This document shows, piece after piece, positions 1,570-15,266 of a stretch of DNA of 64,000 bases. Origin of the DNA: Anthoceros angustus (lineage: Eukaryota > Plantae > Anthocerotophyta); NCBI GenBank assembly GCA_010909165.1, contig VJWM01000103.1, positions 620,001 to 684,000 of the forward strand, read 5' to 3'. Below the pieces are notes generated by a model. That model searched no databases, was not told the DNA's origin, and saw only the letters and a list, made by a program, of their open reading frames with translations. Made by a program: the position numbers and the translations under genes. Every line of letters starts with the position of its first letter. The stretch's first letter is position 1.

Positions 1570-3368
1570 CCCACGTCCGTCTGCTTCTGCGTCTTCATGT
1601 GCACAACTTTGTCTACTCTAACACGCGTCCTGGACCCTGGGGCGCCGGCTAAACTCGGCTACCCGCCTCTTCGTTCCAACAAAGGCCTCCTTCAATTTCG
1701 TAGCAAAGCACGCTCCCCGGGGCTGGAAACTCGAAACAGTGGCGACAGGCTTGGTTGCCTGTGTGAGTCATCTTGCAGGAGCTTTGCGGTGTTGCGGCTA
1801 CAGTCACAGCACATGTCATGGAGCTAGGGCGTCTTGTCTTCCCCTGTCATTTCTGCCTGTTGCCATCCCTGCCACCTAGCCGCAGTCGCTGCAGGGTTGC
1901 GAAAAGCACGGGTGCAGCGACTATCGAAACCTAACACTTGTCCTCGAGAAAACCTGGGACATGTGCTTCCGGTGCCTAACTGACTCATCGTTCTCTCACA
2001 AGCGCGCCGATTTGAGATGAACATTGTGTTACATCTCATTGCCAATGGATCCAGATGTACTTCTATCAGATGCTGGTGAAACACCTTTCTGATGCTGATG
2101 AAACACCTTTCTGATGCTGATGACATCTTGATATGGCAGAGCAATTCCATGGCACCTGTGCAACCGTCATTAGGTTGTGTCCGTTTCTCTCGGAGCTTAA
2201 ACACCTACAAGCAGATCCATGGTCGTAGCTTGGAGCTCCCTGCACACTCCACGACTCCAATCCACGCTTTAGGGCTAGCCTGATGAAAGTTCTTGTTCTT
2301 GCAATTGGCGTTGAGCGTTCTTTAATGGTGGCATGGACGAGTTGTTGCACCGTGAGTGTCGAAAGGCTCCGCTTGAGCTTGCGGAGTCCACGGAACACGC
2401 CGCATGCGGCAGTCATACGGCTTCGTGATGAAATCTTTGTTCAATCGTCCACACGTTCCCCGTTCCCCGCGCAACCAAGCTCAATCCGACACAGGCACAG
2501 ACGATCCGAAAGTCGCAGCACAACCGAGCGCCACACGTCCAGCCCCATGCAGTCCGCAACCGAGCTCATCACGTTCAGTCATCAGTCCATCGCCGTCTCC
2601 GGCACCCCGGAACAGGCAGGCGGGTTTGCATCGCTATCCCTCGTCCGCTTGCCAGTACGAAATGGGAAAATATCATCACCTAGTCCCTTAAAATTCTCAT
2701 TATGTTATAGCGTGTCATAATTCCCGATTTTGAACGCACAAGTTGAAACGCATGCGGCATTGCATTGCGCCACTCCCGACAATACCGAAGCTATACCATT
2801 CTTTGTGGATAATGCAGGGCGAATATGCTATTTCTCTCAAGCTCCTGGCTCAGCCTGTCCCATGGCACCGCAAACTCGCGGTGCGTGTTTATCCGAATGC
2901 TTTCCGCCAGTTTCGCCTGACACGGCAGAAGCTCCCCAGCTGATGTGGCTTGTAGGCGAGGGAGAACGAGAGGATTTGGTGACGTCAATTGCAGGTGCAA
3001 AAGGCCAGCAGCAAGGCCTGAAGCATATCCCTTCTCCAGTCGCATGCATGCAGGAGCCAAGGCTGGGCTGCAGCGTATTGGCAGGAGATTGGGCTCTGCA
3101 CTCTTTGTCCCTTCTCGTCTTCCCCTCTCCATTGAATCAGGCGTCAGCAAACTGCCTGCCGGAGGTGGAGGCACTCTCTTCTCGTTCCAGAAGCTAGTGG
3201 GGTCTTTTGCATCCTGGTGGAGCTAGGTCTCCAATGACAACAGCTCTGGCTTTTGCAAGCTGAATTTGAATGCATCTCGGTGTGGACAGCACTGGCAGCG
3301 TGCTTGCAGCTGGAGGGAGGCAGCTGAGGGCTGGAAGCTGGGGCCGGAACAAATAGAGTAGGCGAGCC

Positions 3369-4987
3369 ATGGCATGCATCTCTATGTCTGCCCCTCCCAT
3401 GGACAAGTGCTCCAATTCCCTCCCCTGCTGCTCAAATTTTAGCAGCACCCATTGTTCGGGGTCGGCTTCGAGGGTGAAACCTTCAAGCGGGATCTACCAG
3501 CGGGATGTGTCCAATGGATTGCTCAGGAGAGGGATGTCGCCATTGCACCAGGCTGAAGTCAAGCACCTTGTCAGCGGATCGCGGGAACGTTTGCGGTGTA
3601 GGTCAGCTGGTGGGGAGAATCCTGGAATGTCACTGGATGCGCTTCTGGAGGTAGATCAGGAAGCGCTGGCAGAAGAGGCTCCCCGTTTGCTGGCGTTGTG
3701 TGAGGACCTAGACTTGCAAGCGCAGGTTGCTAACCTGCGTGATGAGGCCCACAAGGGCCTGCAGAATTTGAACCTTCGGGCCATTGAGAGATACATCGAT
3801 TCGTGGAGCCATGACGGGTTAGTGCAAGGGCTGGAGCAGCACTGGACAGTGAAGACCCCCTCACCGGAGTTTGAGTGCAAGGTTGAGCTGGGAATGCAGG
3901 ATTTACACTTGCAAGCCTCCCTTCAGGTATGGTTCTGAGCGCCCTAGATGCAACATGTTCACTTATGTTCGGCGGTGTAGGGGAGGGTATCCAACAGGCT
4001 TGCTTCTTTGTGTAATGCAGGCTGTGGAGCACCTGACACGGGGTGTCGACAGCTCCTTTGATTGGCAGGTAGCTGCAAAGGAACTTCGCGAGCATGCGAT
4101 TCTAGGATTTGGGCAAGGGCTACCTCCTAGTCATCTCAGTACCACGTCCTCAGAGGAGCAACTCTGGAGTACATGGGTCACAGCCAGGGATGCTATGGCC
4201 AGTGCTGACAATGAGCTGGCCAAGGAGGCTGTTGCACACGACAATGGGATGGATGCTGAAGAGCTTGTGCATTTGGTGAGTTGATGGATTGCCCTTCTGT
4301 TACCTCGCACCCTTTGCACGGAAGACAGATCTGGTTCACTTGCGTATGTTGCGGCGGTTACACTCTTCTTATCTTTACTCCTGACTACGCCTGTGATTTG
4401 CGGCTGGCAGAGGGCAGAGTTGCAAACATCTAGTCCAAGGCGGCCAGTTCCACTCATACTACAGTCAGTAAGCATTGCTGGTGCCTACCTCGGTGCCTCG
4501 TTAACTGGTCTGCTATGCAACGGGGCAATTTCGTCCAGTGCCTGGGCTGCTGAGAATGGACTCTCCATCGAACCGATGCCCGAGTCTGTCGAGGCTGCGA
4601 CTAGAGCACCGGCATGGCTTGGTCCAGCAGTGCTGGCATTTCCTGTCTTGACCTACGGACTGTTCAACTACTACCGTGAAAATGTGAGTGTCTGGTGCTG
4701 ATCAGGTTCATGCTGAAGGGGCTTTGAGTTTAAGACAGCCGCCGTTCTGATAACTATGCTTTTGCTATCCAGGTGAACCCAGGTGCAAAGGTTGTTGATT
4801 GGATGTTTGGAGTCTTGGCAGCAGTGATCATCGCCAACATAGTTCTGATTGCCACTTTAGGGGTGAGTTATCTTTCAACTGTGTCTATTTTAGCATATGT
4901 GACTTATTCGCCCATGCTTATGCTACAACTTTGAGCATTGACGAGGTTTCCTTTTTTCCTCTGTTTCTGCAGGTGCGGTTATATTGA
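3369..4987 (+). CDS. Unknown, probably plastid-targeted membrane protein (~396 aa, 5 exons)
   Basis: Exons 3369-3926, 4021-4275, 4411-4683, 4773-4862 and 4973-4987 join in frame across GT-AG introns. Ser-rich transit-peptide-like N-terminus. C-terminal hydrophobic helices WLGPAVLAFPVLTYGLF and WMFGVLAAVIIANIVLIATLG, ending VRLY*. Confidence 0.8.
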
Positions 4988-6952: not shown

Positions 6953-7545
6953 CTACTCCGCTTGTGGCCCCGCCGCAGGCTTGGCCGCTGCAGATGCCAG
7001 GACGGGCCTTCCCGTCCCTCCACCTCCGGGGATAATGGTCTCCGTGCCATCATACACCAGAACCCCTTTTGCGTTAAACCTCATCTTGGCCAGATCCTCA
7101 TCCAGCTTATCCAGCACCTCCTGCGGTGGAACCCTAATTTCCGTCTTGCACAGCTTCTCGTAGCCCGCAGCTATCAGGCGTCTCCAGAACACCGCCCGCT
7201 CCGTGTCCAGCTTCTTCTCCGGGATGCTCATCAGGTACTCGTCGATCCCCCCTTTCCGATCAATGCACCGCAGCGCGTGCATTGTCACGTCCACCCTGAT
7301 GTGCCGATCCAACACCAAGCTGAAGAGCCGCTTCTTCTGCACGTTAGGTTTCCACGTCCGCCTCGACCTGCGCATTTCAGAGGGTGAGCAGCGCCATCTC
7401 GCACTGGCCAGCCACAAAACTGCACGACACAAGGCAGGTGTGATTACTTGTTTCCGCCGTCCTCGCTGACCTTGTTGCCGAAACGGATGTGCCTCCCGGC
7501 GTACAGCCCCCGCTTGGCCCTGTTCATCACAATTTTGGAGGCCAT
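6953..7545 (-). CDS. MRPL28: Mitochondrial ribosomal protein bL28m
   Basis: Exons 7545-7448 and 7367-6953 (80-bp intron) give MASKIVMNRAKRGLYAGRHIRFGNKVSEDGGNKSRRTWKPNVQKKRLFS...GGIDEYL, the L28 signature. Confidence 0.93.
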
Positions 7546-8475
7546 GGCTTCTCAGCAGACAAGCTCGGGGGGGAGTGGGACAATCCAGAAACAGCGCCCA
7601 CGGTGGAGGACAGTCAGGTGACCTGCTAGTCTGGAGGGACCGATGTCACGGGACCCGACGTGCGGGCCGTGCCGGGTCGGCGGGACACGTGAACGGGAGG
7701 AGACGTGCTTCCACGGGCCGGTCACGTTCCCGGCCTTTCAGCAGTCACCAGTCTTGCACTCACCTTCTTTACTTGATATAATATATTCTTTATTAAGGGG
7801 AGGGGAGGAGATCCCATCCAGCACAGGACATCAAAGGGAGACCCCAAAAGAGCCGCCGTAAAAAGAAGCAACTAAGCTCCATCGCTCCATCCCTATAGTC
7901 ATTTAGTAGACATCTCTCTTTCATAGCAATCATAGAATTCTTAATCTAATTTTTTCTTGGGAGATCAAATTCCACAGAAAAATACAGACTTTATCAAACT
8001 CATTAGAATTTTGGTTTTAACCTCATCATGCAATCAAAGGTTGGGAAAGATAATCATATTCTTTTTTTATCAACTAACCTCCCATCCCATCAATTATATG
8101 GGCTTTTGGTTAAATCTAAACTCGATACAGAGATAAATTTATTTGGAGAGGCTTCTCCACAATGTTTCTCTAGCCCAAGGGCTGGCCATATCTCATGTTA
8201 GAGAATACATTTGGCCCGTAGTCCCATTGGAGAACAACGAATGCAACTCATACCGCTCTGTTCACTAGAGACGGCACGTTCACAATCGAGCCATGTTCAC
8301 AATCGCTTGAAGAAAGTGGATAGAGTCGTTCGAGTAGGATGGACTTGTACTTGGTCCAAGAGATCAAGTCTTCGTACTTAAATACCATTCGCGAGAAACC
8401 ATTACAAAGTAAGATGGGCAGCAGAAGAAACATCTCGGGATAACGTAAAGTACATTAGATGGGCCTGTACTTGGT

Positions 8476-8653
8476 CCAAGAGACCAAGCCTCCGTAGTGA
8501 GGACAATTCTCGTACAATTTAGAACGCCCAAGTTGGACACTCCTATGTACTGTCCCAAAACTTCCCAAGAGACCAAGCCTCCGTAGTGAGGACAATTCTC
8601 GTACAATTTAGAACGCCCAAGTTGGACACTCCTATGTACTGTCCCAAAACTTC
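8476..8653. repeat. Tandem duplication, 89-bp unit x2
   Basis: ccaagagaccaagcctccgtagtgagg...cccaaaacttc starts at 8476 and again at 8565, in AT-richer intergenic DNA. Confidence 0.9.
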
Positions 8654-9319
8654 TTTTCGAGGTATCACTCTGGCAAAAGTACTAAGTACGATTACCTATG
8701 GCCTGCGGCTCTAGGTACCTATATAGATCCTATACAAACATGTTCTCCATTTATGAACATATGAAGCTGTGGAATTTGGTCCCAACTATATCCATCCCTT
8801 GTTGCATTCCATTGAGTGTTGGCCGAGTTTGTATGGAGCATGAGCCTCGCAAAAGAAAGCCCCACATGCGGTCGGGCCCCGCTGCGAGACCTGCGTTGAG
8901 TATAGAGTATATAATATCGTCCTATTTAGAAGAAGTATGCGTGGAGCATGTGAGTGAGAGGCCGGATATGTATCACCGCAAGCAGGCAATGAGCGCAGGC
9001 AGGGTGGTGTTGCAGGTAGTAGTCTAAACTCGGTGGATGAGAGCAATCCTGGGGTTTAGGTAACTCAAGCGTACTAGTGTAGAGCAGCAGGTAATAAGCG
9101 ACAAGGACAAGCGAGGTGGACGCCACGTCGCCTCTCTCTTTGGCTGCTTCCAAGTTCCGCCAGAGTCTTGCGACTGCAGCTGCCTCTGTCCGCCTCGCCA
9201 CGGTAGCTTCGCCCGGCCTGGTCGCTGGTCTGCGTTGCCGGGTTGCTGGGTTGCTGGATGCTGCAGCGCGTGGACAGCACCCCAAGGTCCCTCTTCCCCT
9301 TCCAAGCCCCCGCACCTGT

Positions 9320-9505
9320 ACCAATTCCCTTTCCCATTCCCATTCCCCATTCCCATGCCCCCATTCCCGCAACCACTTGCCGCCCGGCTAGCATTCTCTT
9401 GGCACTGACTTTGAGGGGAAGTTGCCCGGCCCCGGCCCCGGCACCGGCACCGGCACCGGCGGACGGCACCAATTGCTCTGGGCCTGGGCCTGGGCCCGGC
9501 CTGGG
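9320..9505. repeat. Hexamer microsatellite cluster (ATTCCC)n, (GGCACC)n, (GGGCCT)n
   Basis: Directly visible upstream of the 1046-aa ORF. Confidence 0.85.
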
Positions 9506-9800
9506 GACGCGCGGCTGCTGGAATTGCTCAGGATTGCTGGCCTTGGCCGGGTGTGCTGCTCTCGGGACATGACCAGATCTTTGATGGCGCAATCGCAGGC
9601 CTCGTCGGAGTCCCACGTGTAGCGGCTGCGGGCTGGAGGCAGCCCGGTGCCCTCATGCGTCCATGACTCGCCCTGCTCAGGATGTGAGAGCCTGCCAAGA
9701 AGGGCCCAATTCTGCGCATTCCCAGCTGCGGGCCGGCGGGCAAGATGCTGTGCGGAGCCCGGCAGGCCAGGCGTGACGCGGGGGGGAATCCCTTCTTGCC

Positions 9801-12800
9801 ATGTCGGCCGCTGCCTCTGCGTCTGCGTCCGCCGCTGCCGGGGTGGCGGACAAGCCCGCCAGGTCAAGAAAGAGCAAGGCTTTCACCTTGGGGGCGCTTC
9901 TTGCCGGCGCGGATGTGGATCCGCGCTTCCCCGGGGACGGGCTGCAGGATGGCATGAGGCCGGCGGGGAGCGGGAGCGCCAGCGCCAGCGCCAGCGCCAG
10001 CCTCAGCCTGGGGGAGGGCAGCAACGACGTCGGGGCCGACGGCGAGGATGACCTGGATTTCGAGGACGACAAGGGGGATGGCGATGGGAATGGGGATGGG
10101 GATGGCGATGGGAACGAGCTGGAGCTGGAGCTGGAGCAGGAGCAGGAGCAAGAGCACGAGCACGAGCACGAGCACGAGCAGGAGCAGGAGCAGGAGGAGG
10201 AGGAGGAGGAGGGTTTCGGGAATGGGCGGGGGGACGAGCAGGAGGGGAGCATGGGCATCGGCATGGGCATGGGCATGGGCAGCACCAGCAGTCTCAAGAA
10301 GAAGCTCTTCAAGCGCCAGTTTAGGAACGCCTGGAGGTACCTCTACCCGTGGGTCATCACCAGGAAGAAGCCCAGCGGGGAGACGGTGATGAAATGCGAG
10401 TACTGCGAGGAGGGCGGGCTGGACACGCCCTGGGGGAAGGGATCCGGGTGCAGGAACCTGCAGCTGTCCGCTCTGCGCTGCCATGCCAACTCCGAGAACC
10501 ACAAGAAGGCGGAGGCCAGATGGGGGTGCCGGCCGGGCGAGCACATCCGCTCCCTGGCCCTGCCGCTGCCCCTGCCCCTGCCCCTGCCGGTGCCTGTGCC
10601 TGTGTCGGTGCCGGCGCCGGCGCCGCTGCCGCTGCCGGACCAGATGCGGGAGATGGCGGATCAGGGGGCGGACATGGTGGCGTGCCATGTCATGGACTTC
10701 GAGGAGGAGCTGCAGGGGGACGGGGCTGCGGAGAAGGGGAAGAATGGGAAGCTGGTGAAGAGGCACTTCAGGCATGCTTGGAGGCTGCTGTATCCGTGGG
10801 TCAGGACGGTGAGGAAGCCTGGGGGGGAGAGTGTGATGAAGTGCAGGTACTGTGAGGAGGGGAATCTCGACACTCCTTGGGGTAAAGGCTCTGGGTGCAG
10901 GAACCTGCAGCTTTCGGCTCTCAGGTGTCATGCCAGATCTGAGAACCACAAGAAGGCGGAGGCCCGCTGGGGCAGCCGGTTTGATGATGTCAGGCCCATG
11001 TTGGAGAGCGTCAAGGCGGGGGCGGATGAGGTTAGGCTGCCGCCGGATAACACTGTGGCACCGCTGGTTGAGGGGTCGACGGTGTTTCAGGATGCGCTGC
11101 GGCCCTTGTGTTTGCCGGATATGAGCAGGTCTATGGCGATGCAGGTGAGGTCGTCCACGGAGCCACTGCGCCTCCTGCCCCATGACTTGCTGCAGGGGCT
11201 CTTGGACTCTGCTGACAGGGGTTCCGTCATCTCCGGTTTGCAGTTGATGTATTTCATTGCGTGGAAGAACTATCCTCTGGAGGCTTATCCGGAGCTGTGT
11301 GACCTCGTGAGGTTGTTGGGGGCGCCCAAGGTGCCTGGGAAGGATGACGGTTTAGATTATGTGAGTATGGATGCCGGCAAGGCTTTTCTCTCGGCGGCTA
11401 GTGACTACCTGAAACTGACTCAGCAGGAAGAGCTCAAGGACAGCCCTTTCTTTTCTCTGCTCGTTGACAACGGTGTGGGCTTGGCTGTGGAGAATCATGT
11501 GGCCATGTATGTCACGTATCTCTCTGGGAAGGGGGCTGGCCGTCCGACCACCGAATTTCTGCAGCTTGTGGAAATAAAGGACAGGTCTGCCCACTCCATT
11601 TATACTGCCGTGTGCAACATGCTGATGCAGAGGAATCTAGTTAGGGCCAAGCAAGTAGTGCTTGCCACAGATGGCACTTCGGGCCTGAGCAGTGAAAGGG
11701 GTCATCTCGTCTCCATATTCAGGAGGGATGTGCCCCATCTCCTGGAGACTCACAGTGTGACACGCCTTGCGACGGAATGTCTCGCCGCCGGAGATGCTGC
11801 AAGGAATGTACCCGAGTTAAATTTTGTCAACAATTTTGTCAGGAAGGTCTACGAGTCAGTTAGCAGCTCAGCGAATGAGCATATAGAATTTGAGGAGCTG
11901 ATGGAAGCTTTCACGGCTGGTATGGTGGATCCATCTTATTTCTACAAAGTGGAGTGGGTTTCTAGGTGGCAAGCCGTGGAGAAGCTCGTGCAAGCCATGC
12001 CCTTCCTACTTGACAAATGGCAAGCTGAAGAGCATGGCTGGTATGGTTATGCCACTATTTACCAAGTGCAGTTCTGGCTTCATCTGTTAGCCGATGTGCT
12101 GCTGGAATTGAATAAACTAAACAAGAAGATCCAAGAAGAAAATGTGGAAATAACCACCATTGGATCTTTTCTTGATGTCACCCTGTCTGTGTTGAGGAGA
12201 CGGTTTCTTCGAGGGCACAACGAGTTTGGGCTTGGAGGAAGGTATGTCGATCAGCTGCTGAAAGAAGGGGAGTTGAGATCCACAGATATGCATGGGAATG
12301 TTCGGGTGCACATTTTGAGGTTGGAAGGTCTGCAAGGCTCCCTAAGAGGAGGTTCTGTAGAAGACTGCAAAGCACTTGGGGAGATTTTTGTGCAGAACGT
12401 TGTCCAGCTTCTGATTGACAGGTTTCCCGATATCAACGTCTTCCATTCAGCAAGACTATTTAGTCCCAAGTACTATCCGAGTGATGAGATCGAGATGGAG
12501 CGAATGACAGCCCATTGGTTGGAGAAGCTACTGGAGCGGTTCTGTGATGGTTTGGCACAGCCGTTGGTCTCCAGGGAAAGTTGCAAGGCCGAATTGCATG
12601 AGTTCGTCTCCATGCTTGCAAATTCTTGCGAGCGGAAAAACATGTTGGAGGCCTGGAAATTTTGCGGAGGGACACCTCACTGGCACCAAGACTGGCCGAA
12701 CTTGATGAGACTCTGGCAAATAGTGATGGTCATCCCTGCGAGCACGGTAGTATGTGAACGTGGATTTTCCAAGAAGGTGCTCACCCGGAACAGCAACAGG

Positions 12801-12941
12801 AGCAGGTTATCCTTGCAAGCGTGGGATGACATCTTGCGGATATCAGTGAACGGTCCAGATACGAGCAAGATTGATTGGCTGACGATGTTTGATGTCTGGA
12901 AGAATGGAAAGGACAATGGAGTGCTTCCAAAGTTTCACTGA
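9801..12941 (+). CDS. ZNF862/DUF4371-like hAT transposase-derived protein with two tandem TTF-type zinc fingers (likely domesticated)
   Basis: Intact intronless 1046-aa ORF. Two near-identical modules F-x3-W-x3-YPW..MKC-x2-C..PWGKGSGCRNLQLSALRCH-x2-SENH (~10308-10526 and ~10753-10972). RNase-H-like motifs FFSLLVD and LATDG, a W (EWVSR), and the C-terminal hATC motif IPASTVVCERGFS...RSRL. Confidence 0.85.
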   Translation: MSAAASASASAAAGVADKPARSRKSKAFTLGALLAGADVDPRFPGDGLQDGMRPAGSGSASASASASLSLGEGSNDVGADGEDDLDFEDDKGDGDGNGDGDGDGNELELELEQEQEQEHEHEHEHEQEQEQEEEEEEGFGNGRGDEQEGSMGIGMGMGMGSTSSLKKKLFKRQFRNAWRYLYPWVITRKKPSGETVMKCEYCEEGGLDTPWGKGSGCRNLQLSALRCHANSENHKKAEARWGCRPGEHIRSLALPLPLPLPLPVPVPVSVPAPAPLPLPDQMREMADQGADMVACHVMDFEEELQGDGAAEKGKNGKLVKRHFRHAWRLLYPWVRTVRKPGGESVMKCRYCEEGNLDTPWGKGSGCRNLQLSALRCHARSENHKKAEARWGSRFDDVRPMLESVKAGADEVRLPPDNTVAPLVEGSTVFQDALRPLCLPDMSRSMAMQVRSSTEPLRLLPHDLLQGLLDSADRGSVISGLQLMYFIAWKNYPLEAYPELCDLVRLLGAPKVPGKDDGLDYVSMDAGKAFLSAASDYLKLTQQEELKDSPFFSLLVDNGVGLAVENHVAMYVTYLSGKGAGRPTTEFLQLVEIKDRSAHSIYTAVCNMLMQRNLVRAKQVVLATDGTSGLSSERGHLVSIFRRDVPHLLETHSVTRLATECLAAGDAARNVPELNFVNNFVRKVYESVSSSANEHIEFEELMEAFTAGMVDPSYFYKVEWVSRWQAVEKLVQAMPFLLDKWQAEEHGWYGYATIYQVQFWLHLLADVLLELNKLNKKIQEENVEITTIGSFLDVTLSVLRRRFLRGHNEFGLGGRYVDQLLKEGELRSTDMHGNVRVHILRLEGLQGSLRGGSVEDCKALGEIFVQNVVQLLIDRFPDINVFHSARLFSPKYYPSDEIEMERMTAHWLEKLLERFCDGLAQPLVSRESCKAELHEFVSMLANSCERKNMLEAWKFCGGTPHWHQDWPNLMRLWQIVMVIPASTVVCERGFSKKVLTRNSNRSRLSLQAWDDILRISVNGPDTSKIDWLTMFDVWKNGKDNGVLPKFH

Positions 12942-13495
12942 CTCGGCTCCTTACAACCGGTTCGGTATCCCAAGCCTCTTAACCCTTTGTACAAACGAAA
13001 CTCACAACCTAATTATCAGCGGTCTGACACTACACAAAAAAGTTAATTTGTAGGAGCTTTTGACAGGTTACAAAACATTCATTCTTTGTGCCTCTGTTGG
13101 CACCATCTCTCACGGGTGTGCATTGATCCTTGTAATTTTGCAATCATCTTGAATGTCTTCAAGTTTTGTGATGTGCTGTGAGAATTTTATTTTTGCGCCT
13201 CACCAAGGTGTACACTATATCTCAATTGAAACAGAATCTCAGCTTACAAGTTATTTTGCTGCCGGTATCAGCAAAGAAAGTCAAGCTCTGTGCTAATTAC
13301 ATCCAACATCCCAACTGGAACTTTTGTTCAACTGCTTGGCTGGGACTCCGGTAGAGCTTCCACTTGGTGAAAGCTTGGAGAGATGCAAACAACTTGATGA
13401 ATCCCTCCATGCAACAAGTCCTCAAATACGACGGTGCTGCAGAAAAAGAATCGACTGTACAGATAAAACATAGGTGTGCCTCACAGCCTTACACC

Positions 13496-14293
13496 TTACA
13501 CAAGCCAAACATTCTGTATTTGGGTGGCTAGCGAAGGACCAAAACACTTAGCTTGGGTAACGCTAAATCTAATACAGGCGCCACAAGTGGATGCAACCCG
13601 TGTAGTCTGCAAAACGTAGCAAGCACTCCGCCCCAGACTCTTGGCCTGCACAAGCAAACCCCAAACCTCTGAGCCCTCCTCTAGCTCCTCCACGGTCACT
13701 GCACTGCAGGCATCACCCGGCAGCCCTGCAATGCAACTGTTGCCAAGGCTAGACGGGTCTAATCTGTGCACCATTATGACACCATCAGGACAGAGCTCCG
13801 AAACAGACTTCCTGACACAAGTCCACTGCTCTGGATTGTCCAGTACCTCCCTAGAAACCTTGTGCCGCGTTGACTCCCCTGCTCCATATACAAGGTGCAG
13901 AAACGGTGCTTCCTGTAGGTGTCTGACGATGTCGAACACAGCCTTCTCCAACCACCTCTCAAACACCCCATGAGGTGTGCTGGTGCAGTCTCTTGGGAAC
14001 CTACAGGTAAGGTCTTCCTGTGACTCACCAATTCCCTCATACTCCCGGAGTTGGCATGTCATGACCCTTCTGCGAAAGGGACTCAATGTTTCCAACCGGA
14101 CATTCTTCAGACTCACCTCCCACCTACATCTAGCTGGTCTCAGAGAAGAGTCAAACGCCACGTTCGTAGATGGGAACCCCATGTGCACCCTACCAAAACA
14201 TAATTGATCTCTGGTCCTGGAAGCACAGCACATGCTTTCGGAGCAAGGTAACATCCCGCATTTCGCCATCTCACTCACCCAATTTCCGCCCAT
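13496..14293 (-). CDS. Conserved plant uncharacterised protein (DUF7804-like), probably plastid-targeted
   Basis: 265-aa single coding exon. Motifs WLEKAVFDIVRHLQEAPFL, PDGVIMV, WGLLVQ and ACYVLQT..C..F are recalled from a plant-wide unknown family. A probable 5'UTR intron lies at ~14325-14427. Confidence 0.75.
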   Translation of the reverse strand: MGGNWVSEMAKCGMLPCSESMCCASRTRDQLCFGRVHMGFPSTNVAFDSSLRPARCRWEVSLKNVRLETLSPFRRRVMTCQLREYEGIGESQEDLTCRFPRDCTSTPHGVFERWLEKAVFDIVRHLQEAPFLHLVYGAGESTRHKVSREVLDNPEQWTCVRKSVSELCPDGVIMVHRLDPSSLGNSCIAGLPGDACSAVTVEELEEGSEVWGLLVQAKSLGRSACYVLQTTRVASTCGACIRFSVTQAKCFGPSLATQIQNVWLV

Positions 14294-15266
14294 AATTACA
14301 ACAAATAAATCCCCTCCAGCTCCCTGAATAGATATTCTAAGTCGGCTAGCCAGATTCAGTCCTGAGCTTACAGTTCTCGCGCATTCACAGCCACAAGAGG
14401 CGAAAGCAAAATTCTATTTCGACTCACCGCACTGCCCATTCCCATGTAAGGACGTTGCCATGCCCGATCCCGAGGCCCAAGAATTCCCATGTTTCAGCCG
14501 ATTTTACAACTTCGTCACGCCATGTTGAGAAACTTTCTGCCTTTCGTTCTCCAGTGACGACATCGCTCAAAGTAGCGAGCCCCTGCCCCTGCCTGCTCCG
14601 ACCTGATCCGATTGCGCACCGACCCGGAAGCTTCTGCGCTACGAAGCTGCCGGGAATGCCGGCGCCAGACGAGCTTGTGGCCGGCTGTGGTGCAAGCTTC
14701 GTCGGTTAGGCGTCAGGAGAGCAGGACCGTAACAAGAAGGTGAGCAAACATCCGGTTGTGGACCGGCAGCCGGCCCATGTGGCAGGCACGGGCACCCATA
14801 CTTCCTGCCAGGTGGCGGTGGGATAGTGGCTCACGACCCGCTGCGAGACCATGTTTGGCGCACCTCAGAGCGCGCCCAGCTTATGTGGCTCGTGACATGG
14901 CGCCGGGCTGCACGCGCCCGGGCACGCTCGCTTTAAGTGCGTTTTCATGTCGGAGACAAAACGAGGGTGCGTTTTTCAATTAATCACGAAGATACATGTG
15001 AGACTAATCGCGGGGCGGGGCAGCGGCATCCCTTCGACAGGCCACCAGCATGGCAAAACGGAAAAGCGTGGTGGAGGCCGCCTCCCCCGCTTGCGTGTCC
15101 CAGTGTCAGAAGCTTTGCGTGCAACGAGATCGTCGTGCACCGTGCGCCTCCTTCTGGTTTCCTTGCACGGGCCAGATTCTTTGGATTCCTTCTGCTCTCG
15201 AGTGCTGGAGCTTGCTGCCGGCTCTCGTTGCCGCACTGTCCAATTTGTCGAAAAATCCGCGGCCTG

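What the first reader, a model, noticed from the sequence alone, without database searches (positions are those of the whole stretch)
9801..12941. Probable domesticated ZNF862-type hAT transposase embedded among host genes
Seen: a fully open 1046-codon intronless ORF between bL28m and a conserved plant gene. Only ~550 bp separate it from its convergent neighbour, and I see no TIR or 8-bp TSD. By contrast, the TE island in this window is heavily decayed. D, D and E positions remain (LLVD, ATDG, CERGFS), but the usual DESTD reads DNGVG and the hAT CxxH motif (typically HCxAHRL) reads HSVTRL. Known: CxxH is important for hAT catalysis, and ZNF862-like genes and SLEEPER/DAYSLEEPER are domesticated hATs. 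Inference: this is a catalytically disabled transposase kept as a host DNA-binding regulator, possibly a domestication distinct from the BED-finger SLEEPERs.
Basis: partly seen in the sequence, partly recalled or inferred. Interest (0 to 1): 0.8.

Follow-up and report, generated by a model that had tools for sequence, protein, structure and literature searches.

The report
Domesticated hAT transposase gene, bryophytes
This intact, intronless 1046-codon gene in a probable hornwort is a former "jumping gene" enzyme (hAT transposase) that has lost its transposon ends and part of its catalytic pocket, yet is kept under strong selection and shared with the liverwort Marchantia, so it is an apparently undescribed, ancient case of a transposase turned into a plant host gene.

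Summary
Window 9801-12941 (+) is one open 1046-codon frame between a bL28 gene and a convergent DUF7804 gene 555 bp downstream.

What it encodes:
- two CCHH zinc fingers of the zf-C17orf113 type;
- a hAT core whose model matches the Hermes transposase (pLDDT 86.5, Foldseek E 6e-10).

Among 163 relatives, only this protein, an 83%-identical orthologue (P0001) and Marchantia Mp7g13480 (52%) replace HCxAH by HS... and lack DESTD. These three form one clade (support 100/99), even with the motif columns removed. The clade sits inside a streptophyte family of intact-motif, multi-copy, TIR-bearing elements.

Evidence for a host gene:
- Against the P0001 locus, pN is 0.117 with synonymous sites saturated (omega about 0.06).
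- An upstream gene and an identical 24-nt upstream element are shared with that locus.
- I found no TIR/TSD and no second copy in the window.
- Probable RNA contigs cover the gene without joints.

Verdict: a domesticated DUF4371/ZNF862-type hAT transposase, independent of the angiosperm SLEEPERs. It is most likely a dimeric DNA-binding factor unable to excise DNA. Residual nicking in hornworts, where D-D-E is intact, is not excluded.

I found no paper on it. It is a new member of a known kind, of moderate interest. The scan lists this same stretch a second time (s1-700810).

The parts
9801..12941 (+). Intronless 1046-codon ORF (stop included) of the hAT-derived gene
   Evidence: ORF; Pfam; no joints in laid contigs; intact orthologous ORFs in L005 and L001
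9117..9140 (+). 24-nt upstream element, identical in the orthologous locus L005 (9095-9118). It has an ACGT core (GCCACGTC) followed by a CT-rich tract, and lies about 70 nt upstream of the 5' end of the probable RNA contig. Candidate promoter element.
   Evidence: Identical although synonymous sites between the two species are saturated. Promoter function is inferred.
9207..9800 (+). Probable 5' UTR of about 600 nt. Contigs of the probable RNA run X1 begin at 9207, whereas the DNA run X2 of the same sample also covers 8400-9206.
   Evidence: tables 2 and 8. The 'RNA' label of the run is the tool's guess.
9975..10295 (+). Acidic and low-complexity N-terminal region made of in-frame hexanucleotide microsatellites (dipeptide runs GD, EL/EQ/EH, GM). 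Much shorter in P0001 and absent from other relatives.
   Evidence: period-6 arrays; alignment
10296..10520 (+). Zinc finger 1 (zf-C17orf113 type, CCHH: C-x2-C ... H-x5-H)
   Evidence: pN 0.034 against L005.
10749..10973 (+). Zinc finger 2, a tandem duplicate of finger 1 (77% nt identity). The duplication is shared with P0001; Marchantia has one finger.
   Evidence: repeat D2. AF2 model pLDDT 92.9. All 11 listed substitutions against the close relative fall on third codon positions.
11199..12938 (+). hAT transposase core: RNase-H-like catalytic domain with an all-helical insertion domain and the C-terminal hAT dimerisation region
   Evidence: AF2 pLDDT 86.5, pTM 0.85. Foldseek top 12 hits are all Hermes transposase, E 6e-10 to 1e-7. 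The A1 profile hits Hermes. omega 0.05.
11457..11480 (+). Degenerate first catalytic motif LLVDNGVG (family consensus xDESTD). D556 is kept; E, T and the last D are lost.
11667..11681 (+). Second catalytic motif TDGTS (family TDGAS). D624 is kept.
   Evidence: (aligns with Hermes D248 region)
11751..11777 (+). Lost CxxH motif: HSVTRLATE in place of HCxAHRE (C to S, H to R, 2-residue insertion)
   Evidence: Role of CxxH: PMC4763223.
12753..12770 (+). CERGFS motif with catalytic E986, inside the Pfam Dimer_Tnp_hAT match (aa 948-1004, nt 12642-12812)
   Evidence: aligns with Hermes SERTFS
12942..13203 (+). Probable 3' UTR. In the close relative's run X3, the contig over the gene ends at 13203. 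A separate contig of different depth starts at 13220 for the convergent neighbour.
   Evidence: table 8 (records 27 and 28)
3357..4931 (+). Upstream gene of unknown family that is also upstream of the orthologue in L005 (6058-7576), in the same order and orientation. This is the microsynteny anchor.
   Evidence: no Pfam match

Best explanation
This is a domesticated ('molecularly tamed') hAT transposase of the DUF4371 / zf-C17orf113 (ZNF862-, C17orf113-, FAM200-like) subgroup. It is now an immobile, probably single-copy host gene of a probable hornwort, with an orthologue in the liverwort Marchantia polymorpha (Mp7g13480).

Shown:
- The protein keeps the whole hAT architecture: two N-terminal CCHH fingers, an RNase-H-like core with insertion domain, and a C-terminal dimerisation region.
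- It evolves under strong purifying selection along its whole length.
- The residues around the active site that are near-invariant in mobile relatives (the C of CxxH, the T of DESTD, the A and G of the TDGAS-x-M-x-G block) are replaced in all three members of the clade.
- Each lineage has then lost different further catalytic-site residues. Hornworts lost the H of CxxH and the E and last D of DESTD. Marchantia changed the first catalytic D to E.
- No transposon ends are detectable.

Inferred mechanism:
- The protein binds specific DNA sites through its (duplicated) fingers and basic N-terminus.
- It dimerises or oligomerises through the hAT core and C-terminal domain, as hAT transposases do.
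- It acts as a chromatin or transcription factor. The hornwort-specific acidic low-complexity region is a possible activation or histone-binding module.
- It cannot carry out hairpin-mediated excision.

Inferred history: the shared derived substitutions and the well-supported clade point to a single taming event before hornworts and liverworts diverged.
For: Architecture and fold.

Selection: window against L005 gives pN 0.117, pS 0.70 (saturated) and omega about 0.06. By region: fingers pN 0.03-0.06, core omega 0.05. Against a relative at about 96% nt identity, 23 of 38 listed substitutions are at third codon positions, including 11 of 11 in finger 2.

Catalytic-pocket erosion:
- Of 163 relatives, only WIN, P0001 and P0002 have HS in place of HC and lack DESTD.
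- Of 40 columns conserved at 85% or more in 69 relatives, 17 are changed in at least one of the three clade members. Eleven of these lie in the three catalytic motifs and 2 next to the conserved W. The other 23 columns are kept.

Clade: support 99, and 100/99 with motif columns removed.

Relatives behave as transposons:
- 90%-identity clusters of 23-38 members that include fragments.
- Multiple copies in Closterium.
- Two 99.5%-identical 3.27-kb copies in Ceratodon, ending in imperfect 18-bp TIRs.

Immobility and orthology:
- No TIR/TSD and no other copy in the 64 kb.
- A DNA-run contig runs unbroken from the ORF through the spacer into the neighbouring gene.
- The upstream gene and an identical 24-nt upstream element are shared with L005.
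- The same downstream neighbour is present in the close relative (X15 record 13).

Expression: probable RNA contigs cover 9207-13203 but not 8400-9206, which the DNA run does cover.

CxxH role: PMC4763223.
Against: - D556, D624 and E986 (the DDE triad) and the conserved W719 are all intact in both hornwort proteins, so loss of catalysis is not proven.
- Genome-wide copy number was not measured; only contig continuity and the 64-kb window were examined.
- The runs called RNA are guesses by the tool, and contigs cannot show strand or level.
- Microsynteny with L005 is limited to one gene plus a short element and is absent downstream. There is none with Marchantia within 10 kb either side.
- Active transposases also evolve under purifying selection, so a low omega alone is not decisive.
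- No moss orthologue of the clade was found. A single ancient domestication therefore requires loss in mosses, or the database lacks it.
- DNA binding, dimerisation and any regulatory role are untested.
Confidence: 0.72

Rival explanations
1. The gene is domesticated but still catalytic. It would be a site-specific nickase or recombinase recruited for a host DNA transaction, in the manner of Kat1, RAG1 or PiggyMac, rather than a pure DNA-binding factor.
For: The D-D-E triad and the conserved W are intact in both hornwort proteins. The whole core is as constrained (omega 0.05) as the fingers. The Kat1 CxxH double mutant still nicks DNA (PMC4763223).
Against: - The C of CxxH (99% conserved) is lost in all three clade members, and the H is also lost in hornworts.
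- Marchantia has E in place of the first catalytic D (100% conserved elsewhere).
- Different catalytic-site residues are lost in different lineages, which is the pattern expected once catalysis is no longer selected.
- CxxH mutants of Kat1 and Hermes cannot form hairpins and so cannot make double-strand breaks.
Confidence: 0.15
2. It is still a transposon gene: a low-copy, autonomous or recently immobilised hAT element whose ends I failed to recognise.
For: The ORF is intact and the architecture complete. Relatives are mobile. My TIR+TSD scan also failed on a real moss element, so its negative result is weak. Genome-wide copy number was not measured.
Against: - The orthologue sits in L005 with the same upstream gene and an identical upstream 24-mer, although synonymous sites are saturated.
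- Between the two species, nucleotide homology in the intergenic flanks of the ORF is limited to that 24-nt upstream element.
- A contig runs unbroken across the ORF's 3' boundary into unique flank.
- Only one representative of the clade per species exists in a 5.8-billion-protein collection, against 23-38 members for the mobile relatives.
- Catalytic-pocket residues are lost.
Confidence: 0.06
3. The hornwort and Marchantia genes are not vertical orthologues. An already degenerate element moved horizontally between bryophyte lineages, or the two lineages tamed related elements independently.
For: No microsynteny with Marchantia within 10 kb either side. No moss member of the clade was found. 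hAT elements are known for horizontal transfer (PMC3942097 title and abstract).
Against: - The clade has 100/99 support with motif columns removed.
- The derived states C to S, T to V/I and G to S are shared.
- An element without CxxH would be unable to excise and spread.
- Loss of microsynteny is expected over the hornwort-liverwort divergence.
Confidence: 0.07

Closest known systems
SLEEPER / DAYSLEEPER family (domesticated hAT transposases of angiosperms; PMC3499209)
   Same: An intronless coding sequence, N-terminal zinc finger(s) plus a hAT dimerisation domain, loss of residues needed for transposition, no flanking hAT repeats, and retention as a host gene.
   Different: - SLEEPERs carry a Pfam BED finger and derive from Ac-like hATs. 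This protein has zf-C17orf113 fingers, no zf-BED hit at E up to 1, and belongs to the DUF4371 subgroup.
- SLEEPERs are reported absent from gymnosperms, mosses and algae. This clade is hornwort plus liverwort.
- It is therefore an independent domestication.
Vertebrate DUF4371-type hAT-derived genes (C17orf113, ZNF862, FAM200A/B, ZBED5, GTF2IRD2)
   Same: The same Pfam finger family (PF25431). Relatives carry PF14291 DUF4371, PF27073 FAM200-ZBED5_RNase-like and PF27046 FAM200-GTF2IRD2-like. A hemichordate family representative is named ZNF862-like.
   Different: On the tree the plant clade is nested among streptophyte elements (Closterium, Chlorokybus, ferns, conifers, mosses) and is not placed with the one animal-named representative sampled, a hemichordate ZNF862-like protein. 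There is no KRAB or SCAN fusion. The taming event is separate.
Hermes transposase (active hAT; PDB 4D1Q, 2BW3, 8SJD)
   Same: The same overall fold over about 550 aligned columns (TM 0.5-0.67). D248 and E572 align with D624 and E986.
   Different: About 13% identity. CxxH (Hermes C265/H268) is absent here. There are no transposon ends, the fingers differ, and there are two of them.
Kat1 (Kluyveromyces lactis domesticated hAT that makes hairpin-capped breaks for mating-type switching; PMC4763223)
   Same: A hAT-derived host gene. It is the model for the rival reading that catalysis is retained.
   Different: Kat1 keeps CxxH, which is essential for its hairpin step. This protein has lost it.
Streptophyte zf-C17orf113/DUF4371 hAT elements (e.g. 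Ceratodon purpureus M758_UG021100, Taxus, Cryptomeria, Adiantum, Ceratopteris and Closterium copies)
   Same: 30-41% identity over the whole core and one finger. They are the closest outgroups on the tree.
   Different: They keep DESTD, TDGAS, HCxAH and CERGFS. They occur in multi-member clusters. In Ceratodon they occur as near-identical 3.27-kb units with TIRs.

Membership tests
hAT transposase superfamily (protein) | RNase-H-like catalytic core interrupted by an all-alpha insertion domain, with a C-terminal hAT dimerisation region | tested here: met
   Pfam Dimer_Tnp_hAT at 26.2 bits, above the 21.4 cutoff. AF2 model pLDDT 86.5. The top 12 PDB matches are all Hermes. The family profile hits Hermes at E 3e-5.
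hAT transposase superfamily (protein) | Catalytic D, D, E triad | tested here: met
   D556, D624 and E986 are present in the window and in P0001. D624 and E986 are anchored to Hermes D248 and E572 by profile alignment. D556 is assigned by motif position only. Marchantia has E at the first position.
hAT transposase superfamily (protein) | CxxH motif in the active site | tested here: not met
   The sequence is HSVTRL. C is 99% and H is 99% conserved in 69 relatives, and both are replaced here.
hAT transposon (mobile element) | Terminal inverted repeats flanked by an 8-bp target-site duplication | tested here: not met
   None within 3 kb either side in the window, L005 or L001. The inverted repeats are low-complexity or chance-level. 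Caveat: the scan also misses the moss element.
hAT transposon (mobile element) | Multiple dispersed near-identical copies | tested here: inconclusive
   No second copy in the 64 kb. A contig runs unbroken from the ORF into flank. The clade has single-member clusters. No whole-genome search was possible.
DUF4371 / ZNF862 / C17orf113-type hAT subgroup | zf-C17orf113 finger together with a DUF4371-type core | tested here: met
   PF25431 matches twice, E 7.8e-29. PF14291 is on record for P0001 and most relatives but was not reported for the window protein itself in my Pfam scan. The tree places the protein inside this family.
SLEEPER family | BED-type C2H2 finger and SLEEPER motifs 1-3; angiosperm-specific clade | tested here: not met
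   No zf-BED hit at E up to 1. The finger model's structural matches are weak, Z at most 4.7, and none of the chains listed is described as a BED finger. The host is a bryophyte. SLEEPER motifs 1-3 were not compared, because no reference sequence was at hand.
Domesticated transposase (operational criteria) | Purifying selection between orthologues | tested here: met
   omega about 0.06 with dS saturated. There is a third-position excess against the close relative.
Domesticated transposase (operational criteria) | Orthologues at a syntenic position in other species | tested here: inconclusive
   The upstream gene and a 24-nt element are shared with L005. The downstream neighbour is shared with the relative at about 96% nt identity. 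There is none with Marchantia.
Domesticated transposase (operational criteria) | Transcribed; loss gives a phenotype | not testable with these tools
   Contigs of runs guessed to be RNA cover the gene.

The most novel reading that the evidence does not exclude
A single taming of a DUF4371-type hAT transposase took place before hornworts and liverworts diverged, that is, in early land plants. It produced a bryophyte gene that has been conserved for hundreds of millions of years. This would be the first domesticated hAT reported outside seed plants, and it is independent of the SLEEPERs. In hornworts, with D-D-E intact but CxxH lost, it might even act as a programmed DNA nickase rather than only as a DNA-binding factor.
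Probability: 0.45. Interest if true: 0.6.

Novelty: new member of a known kind. Interest (0 to 1): 0.45.

Why it matters
Domesticated transposases have repeatedly given rise to regulators, for example DAYSLEEPER, FHY3/FAR1, the ZBEDs and RAG1. The plant hAT domestication I found described in the paper library, the SLEEPER family, is angiosperm-specific (PMC3499209). My searches found no paper on this family in plants, on Mp7g13480, or on hAT domestication in bryophytes.

This locus shows a separate and apparently much older taming, in a different hAT subgroup. The mobile cousins are still present in mosses, ferns, conifers and charophyte algae, so the steps of active-site erosion can be read directly from the alignment.

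Because Marchantia carries the orthologue, the function can be tested at once by knockout, localisation and DAP/ChIP-seq.

Tried and rejected
- **Word-index protein searches.** No further hornwort or liverwort orthologue was found, so selection within liverworts could not be measured.
- **Metagenome scan** with the three-member clade profile found nothing.
- **Exact look-up of the window protein** in public assemblies: not on record.
- **TIR+TSD scans** were negative everywhere, including the moss positive control, so I rely on them only weakly.
- **Moss TIR consensus** searched in the window gave one match, at chance level.
- **Finger fold.** Foldseek found no significant match. VIA-align gave only weak CCHH-finger matches, to TUT4/TUT1 and spliceosomal matrin/U1-type fingers, Z at most 4.7. 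BED-fold membership is left open.
- **Rfam** on 7500-15000: nothing.
- **The four Marchantia assemblies** are identical over 22.6 kb, so they give no polymorphism information.
- **Long minus-strand ORFs** over the GC-rich repeats (e.g. 9864-11183) are shadows of the plus-strand frame, not genes.
- **Depth as copy number** was rejected, following the tool's own caveat.
Full report
**1. The observation**

Window 9801-12941 (+) is a single open frame of 1046 codons. It starts at the first in-frame ATG, and its N-terminus aligns with that of its closest relative.

- Upstream lies a Ribosomal_L28 exon at 6953-7432 on the minus strand.
- Downstream, after 555 bp, lies a convergent DUF7804 ORF at 13496-14293.
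- Pfam finds two zf-C17orf113 fingers (E 7.8e-29) and the hAT C-terminal dimerisation region.
- The N-terminal half is interspersed with in-frame hexanucleotide microsatellites that encode dipeptide runs.
- The finger itself is tandemly duplicated: 10301-10532 and 10748-10979 are 77% identical at the nucleotide level.

**2. Fold and family**

- An AlphaFold2 model of residues 467-1046, built on a 49-sequence alignment, has mean pLDDT 86.5 and pTM 0.85.
- Its 12 best PDB matches are all the Hermes hAT transposase (E 6e-10 to 1e-7, TM up to 0.67). Nothing else is comparable.
- A profile of the family hits Hermes by sequence. It aligns CERGFS with the SERTFS of catalytic E572 and, weakly, TDGAS with the D248 region.
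- A model of finger 2 is confident (pLDDT 92.9). The four ligands C-x2-C ... H-x5-H are invariant in 64 fingers.
- The finger's structural matches are only weak CCHH fingers, Z at most 4.7. I therefore do not call it a BED finger.

**3. Relatives**

The word-index search found 14 proteins:
- one at 83% identity from a Logan assembly (P0001, which also has two fingers);
- Marchantia polymorpha MPTK1_7g13480 at 52% (one finger, intronless);
- at 30-41%, proteins of conifers (Taxus, Cryptomeria), ferns (Adiantum) and a moss (Ceratodon).

The exhaustive profile search found 27,244 representatives at E up to 1e-3 and 1,282 at E up to 1e-30. Named representatives include Ceratopteris, Closterium, Chlorokybus and a hemichordate 'ZNF862-like' protein.

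**4. The active site**

I tabulated the four motifs in all 163 sequences held. Nearly every relative has xDE(S/T)TD, xDGAx, HCxAH and CERGFS. Only the window protein, P0001 and the Marchantia protein have HS in place of HC and lack DESTD.

Forty columns are at least 85% conserved in 69 full-length relatives.
- Six are changed in all three proteins. Four of these lie in the catalytic motifs: the T of DESTD, the A and G of the TDGAS block, and the C of CxxH. The other two (K996, L1011) lie in the C-terminal region.
- Eleven more are changed in only one lineage. In hornworts these include the H of CxxH and the E and last D of DESTD. In Marchantia the first catalytic D (100% conserved elsewhere) is changed to E.
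- The other 23 columns are retained.

So the scaffold is kept while the pocket is eroded, partly in common and partly independently.

The D-D-E triad itself is intact in the two hornwort-type proteins. In Kat1, a C402A/H405A mutation of CxxH abolishes hairpin formation but still allows nicking, and Hermes H268 lies in the active site (PMC4763223). Excision by the hAT mechanism is therefore very unlikely here. Nicking cannot be excluded.

**5. Phylogeny**

- A quick ML tree of 72 full-length cores puts the three proteins in one clade (SH-aLRT 99). The clade sits inside a land-plant group (support 97) whose sister is a Closterium group.
- A careful tree of 32 rows, with all catalytic-motif columns removed, keeps the clade at 100/99. 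Convergent motif loss therefore does not create it.
- Relations among the land-plant subclades are unresolved.

**6. Relatives are mobile; this clade is not visibly so**

- The conifer-type and fern-type representatives stand for 90%-identity clusters of 23-38 members, including many fragments. The window's clade has 1-2 members.
- In Ceratodon, two 3.27-kb units lie in inverted orientation. They differ at 16 positions. Their similarity stops at imperfect 18-bp terminal inverted repeats, and they share one 8-bp flank.
- Around the window ORF, the L005 ORF and the Marchantia ORF, I found no TIR+TSD pair within 3 kb. That scan also fails on the moss element, so it is weak evidence.
- The window holds no second copy.
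- A contig of the DNA run from the same sample runs unbroken from inside the ORF through the spacer into the neighbouring gene (record 21). A 31-mer assembly would not do this across the edge of a repeated element.

**7. Orthology and selection**

- The P0001 locus (L005) has the same upstream gene in the same order and orientation: window 3357-4931 matches L005 6058-7576, with tblastn E down to 7.5e-24.
- At the nucleotide level, similarity between the two loci is confined to that gene, the ORF, and one upstream patch.
- The core of that patch is 24 nt, identical in both, and contains GCCACGTC followed by a CT-rich tract.
- Nei-Gojobori counts for the two ORFs give pN 0.117 and pS 0.70. Synonymous sites are saturated, and omega is about 0.06 or less. 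Per region: fingers pN 0.03-0.06, core omega 0.05, low-complexity and linker parts 0.08-0.16.
- No microsynteny with Marchantia is seen within 10 kb.

**8. Reads**

All four runs laid were contigs, and their RNA or DNA label is the tool's guess.

- The probable RNA run of the window's own organism matches the window with no differences over 9207-9960, 10239-10545 and 10644-14300. It has nothing at 8400-9206, which the DNA run of the same sample does cover.
- In a second organism at about 96% nt identity, one run gives a contig that ends at 13203. A separate contig of different depth starts at 13220, as expected for two convergent transcripts.
- Another run of that organism gives one contig spanning the ORF and the neighbour.
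- No joints were reported, so the gene is intronless.
- Of the 38 listed substitutions inside the ORF, 23 are at third codon positions by my count from the table, including all 11 in finger 2.
- The DNA-run contig shows scattered 1-nt deletions at 10664-11018 that the RNA-type contigs do not share. I read these as read errors in that run.

**9. Organism**

Several points fit a hornwort:
- plant-specific neighbours (DUF1685, P450, IQ);
- Marchantia as the closest named relative;
- about 98 Mb of DNA contigs;
- many runs from a sister species at about 96% nt identity.

Other agents of this scan reached the same view. I did not test it directly, so 'probable hornwort' is an inference.

**10. Comparison with what is known**

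- SLEEPER/DAYSLEEPER genes share the logic: intronless, finger plus hATC, catalytic residues lost, no flanking repeats. But they carry BED fingers and are reported to be absent outside angiosperms (PMC3499209).
- The vertebrate C17orf113, ZNF862, FAM200 and ZBED5 genes share the Pfam families. On my tree the plant clade is nested among streptophyte elements, away from the one animal-named representative sampled, so the vertebrate genes would be separate tamings.
- I found no paper on C17orf113-type proteins in plants, on Mp7g13480, or on hAT domestication in bryophytes.
- Another note of this scan reports a different 'dead hAT next to CSN4' in the same genome. I could not see its sequence and do not know whether it is a paralogue.

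**11. Verdict**

The gene is a domesticated hAT transposase of the DUF4371/zf-C17orf113 type, shared by a probable hornwort lineage and Marchantia.

It is most likely a dimerising, sequence-specific DNA-binding protein that can no longer excise DNA (confidence about 0.7). Retained nicking activity is the main rival (about 0.15).

It is a new member of a known kind: an independent, apparently old and undescribed domestication, readily testable in Marchantia.

Noticed in passing
L007:5163-8438 and L007:10708-13983 (Ceratodon purpureus CM026446.1): Two 3.27-kb copies of an intact-motif relative lie in inverted orientation, 2.3 kb apart, and differ at 16 positions. Similarity ends at imperfect 18-bp terminal inverted repeats (CAnnGCTCAAAAyTGAAG). 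The 5' flank of one copy and the 3' flank of the other share the 8-mer CATATGAA. This fits an inversion or alternative transposition between two insertions.
   Followed up: partly
window 8476-8653 (also 8338-8376 / 8458-8496): A perfect tandem duplication of an 89-bp unit, with related shorter repeats just upstream, lies in the intergenic region between bL28 and the hAT-derived gene. The probable RNA contigs do not cover it.
   Followed up: no
window 3357-4931 (+) and L005:6058-7576: An upstream gene is conserved between the two species at only 37-50% protein identity and has no Pfam match in three consecutive reading-frame pieces. It is an unknown, fast-evolving or multi-exon gene.
   Followed up: no
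N-termini of family members in alignment A1, columns 60-130 (window aa about 15-75): Most relatives begin with a basic GRPKK-like peptide followed by Q-x-x-[LI]-x-x-[ILA]-F-G, which resembles a PCNA-interacting (PIP-box-like) motif. Marchantia keeps it (RQSSIANLFG). The two hornwort-type proteins keep the basic part but have lost the Q and the F.
   Followed up: no
window 10664-11018: The contig of the DNA run X2 (same sample as the window) shows nine single- or double-base deletions relative to the window. The RNA-type contigs of the same sample and of the sister species do not have them. They are probably read errors of that run, not real frameshifts.
   Followed up: partly
window 13985 (DUF7804 gene, minus strand): The sister organism carries an 18-nt in-frame insertion (a GGTGCT-type repeat) in the convergent neighbour gene.
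   Followed up: no
same genome, another piece (note s1-278092): Another first-reader note describes a 'catalytically dead hAT transposase head-to-head with CSN4' elsewhere in this genome. It could be a paralogue or a second, independent hAT domestication. I had no access to its sequence.
   Followed up: no
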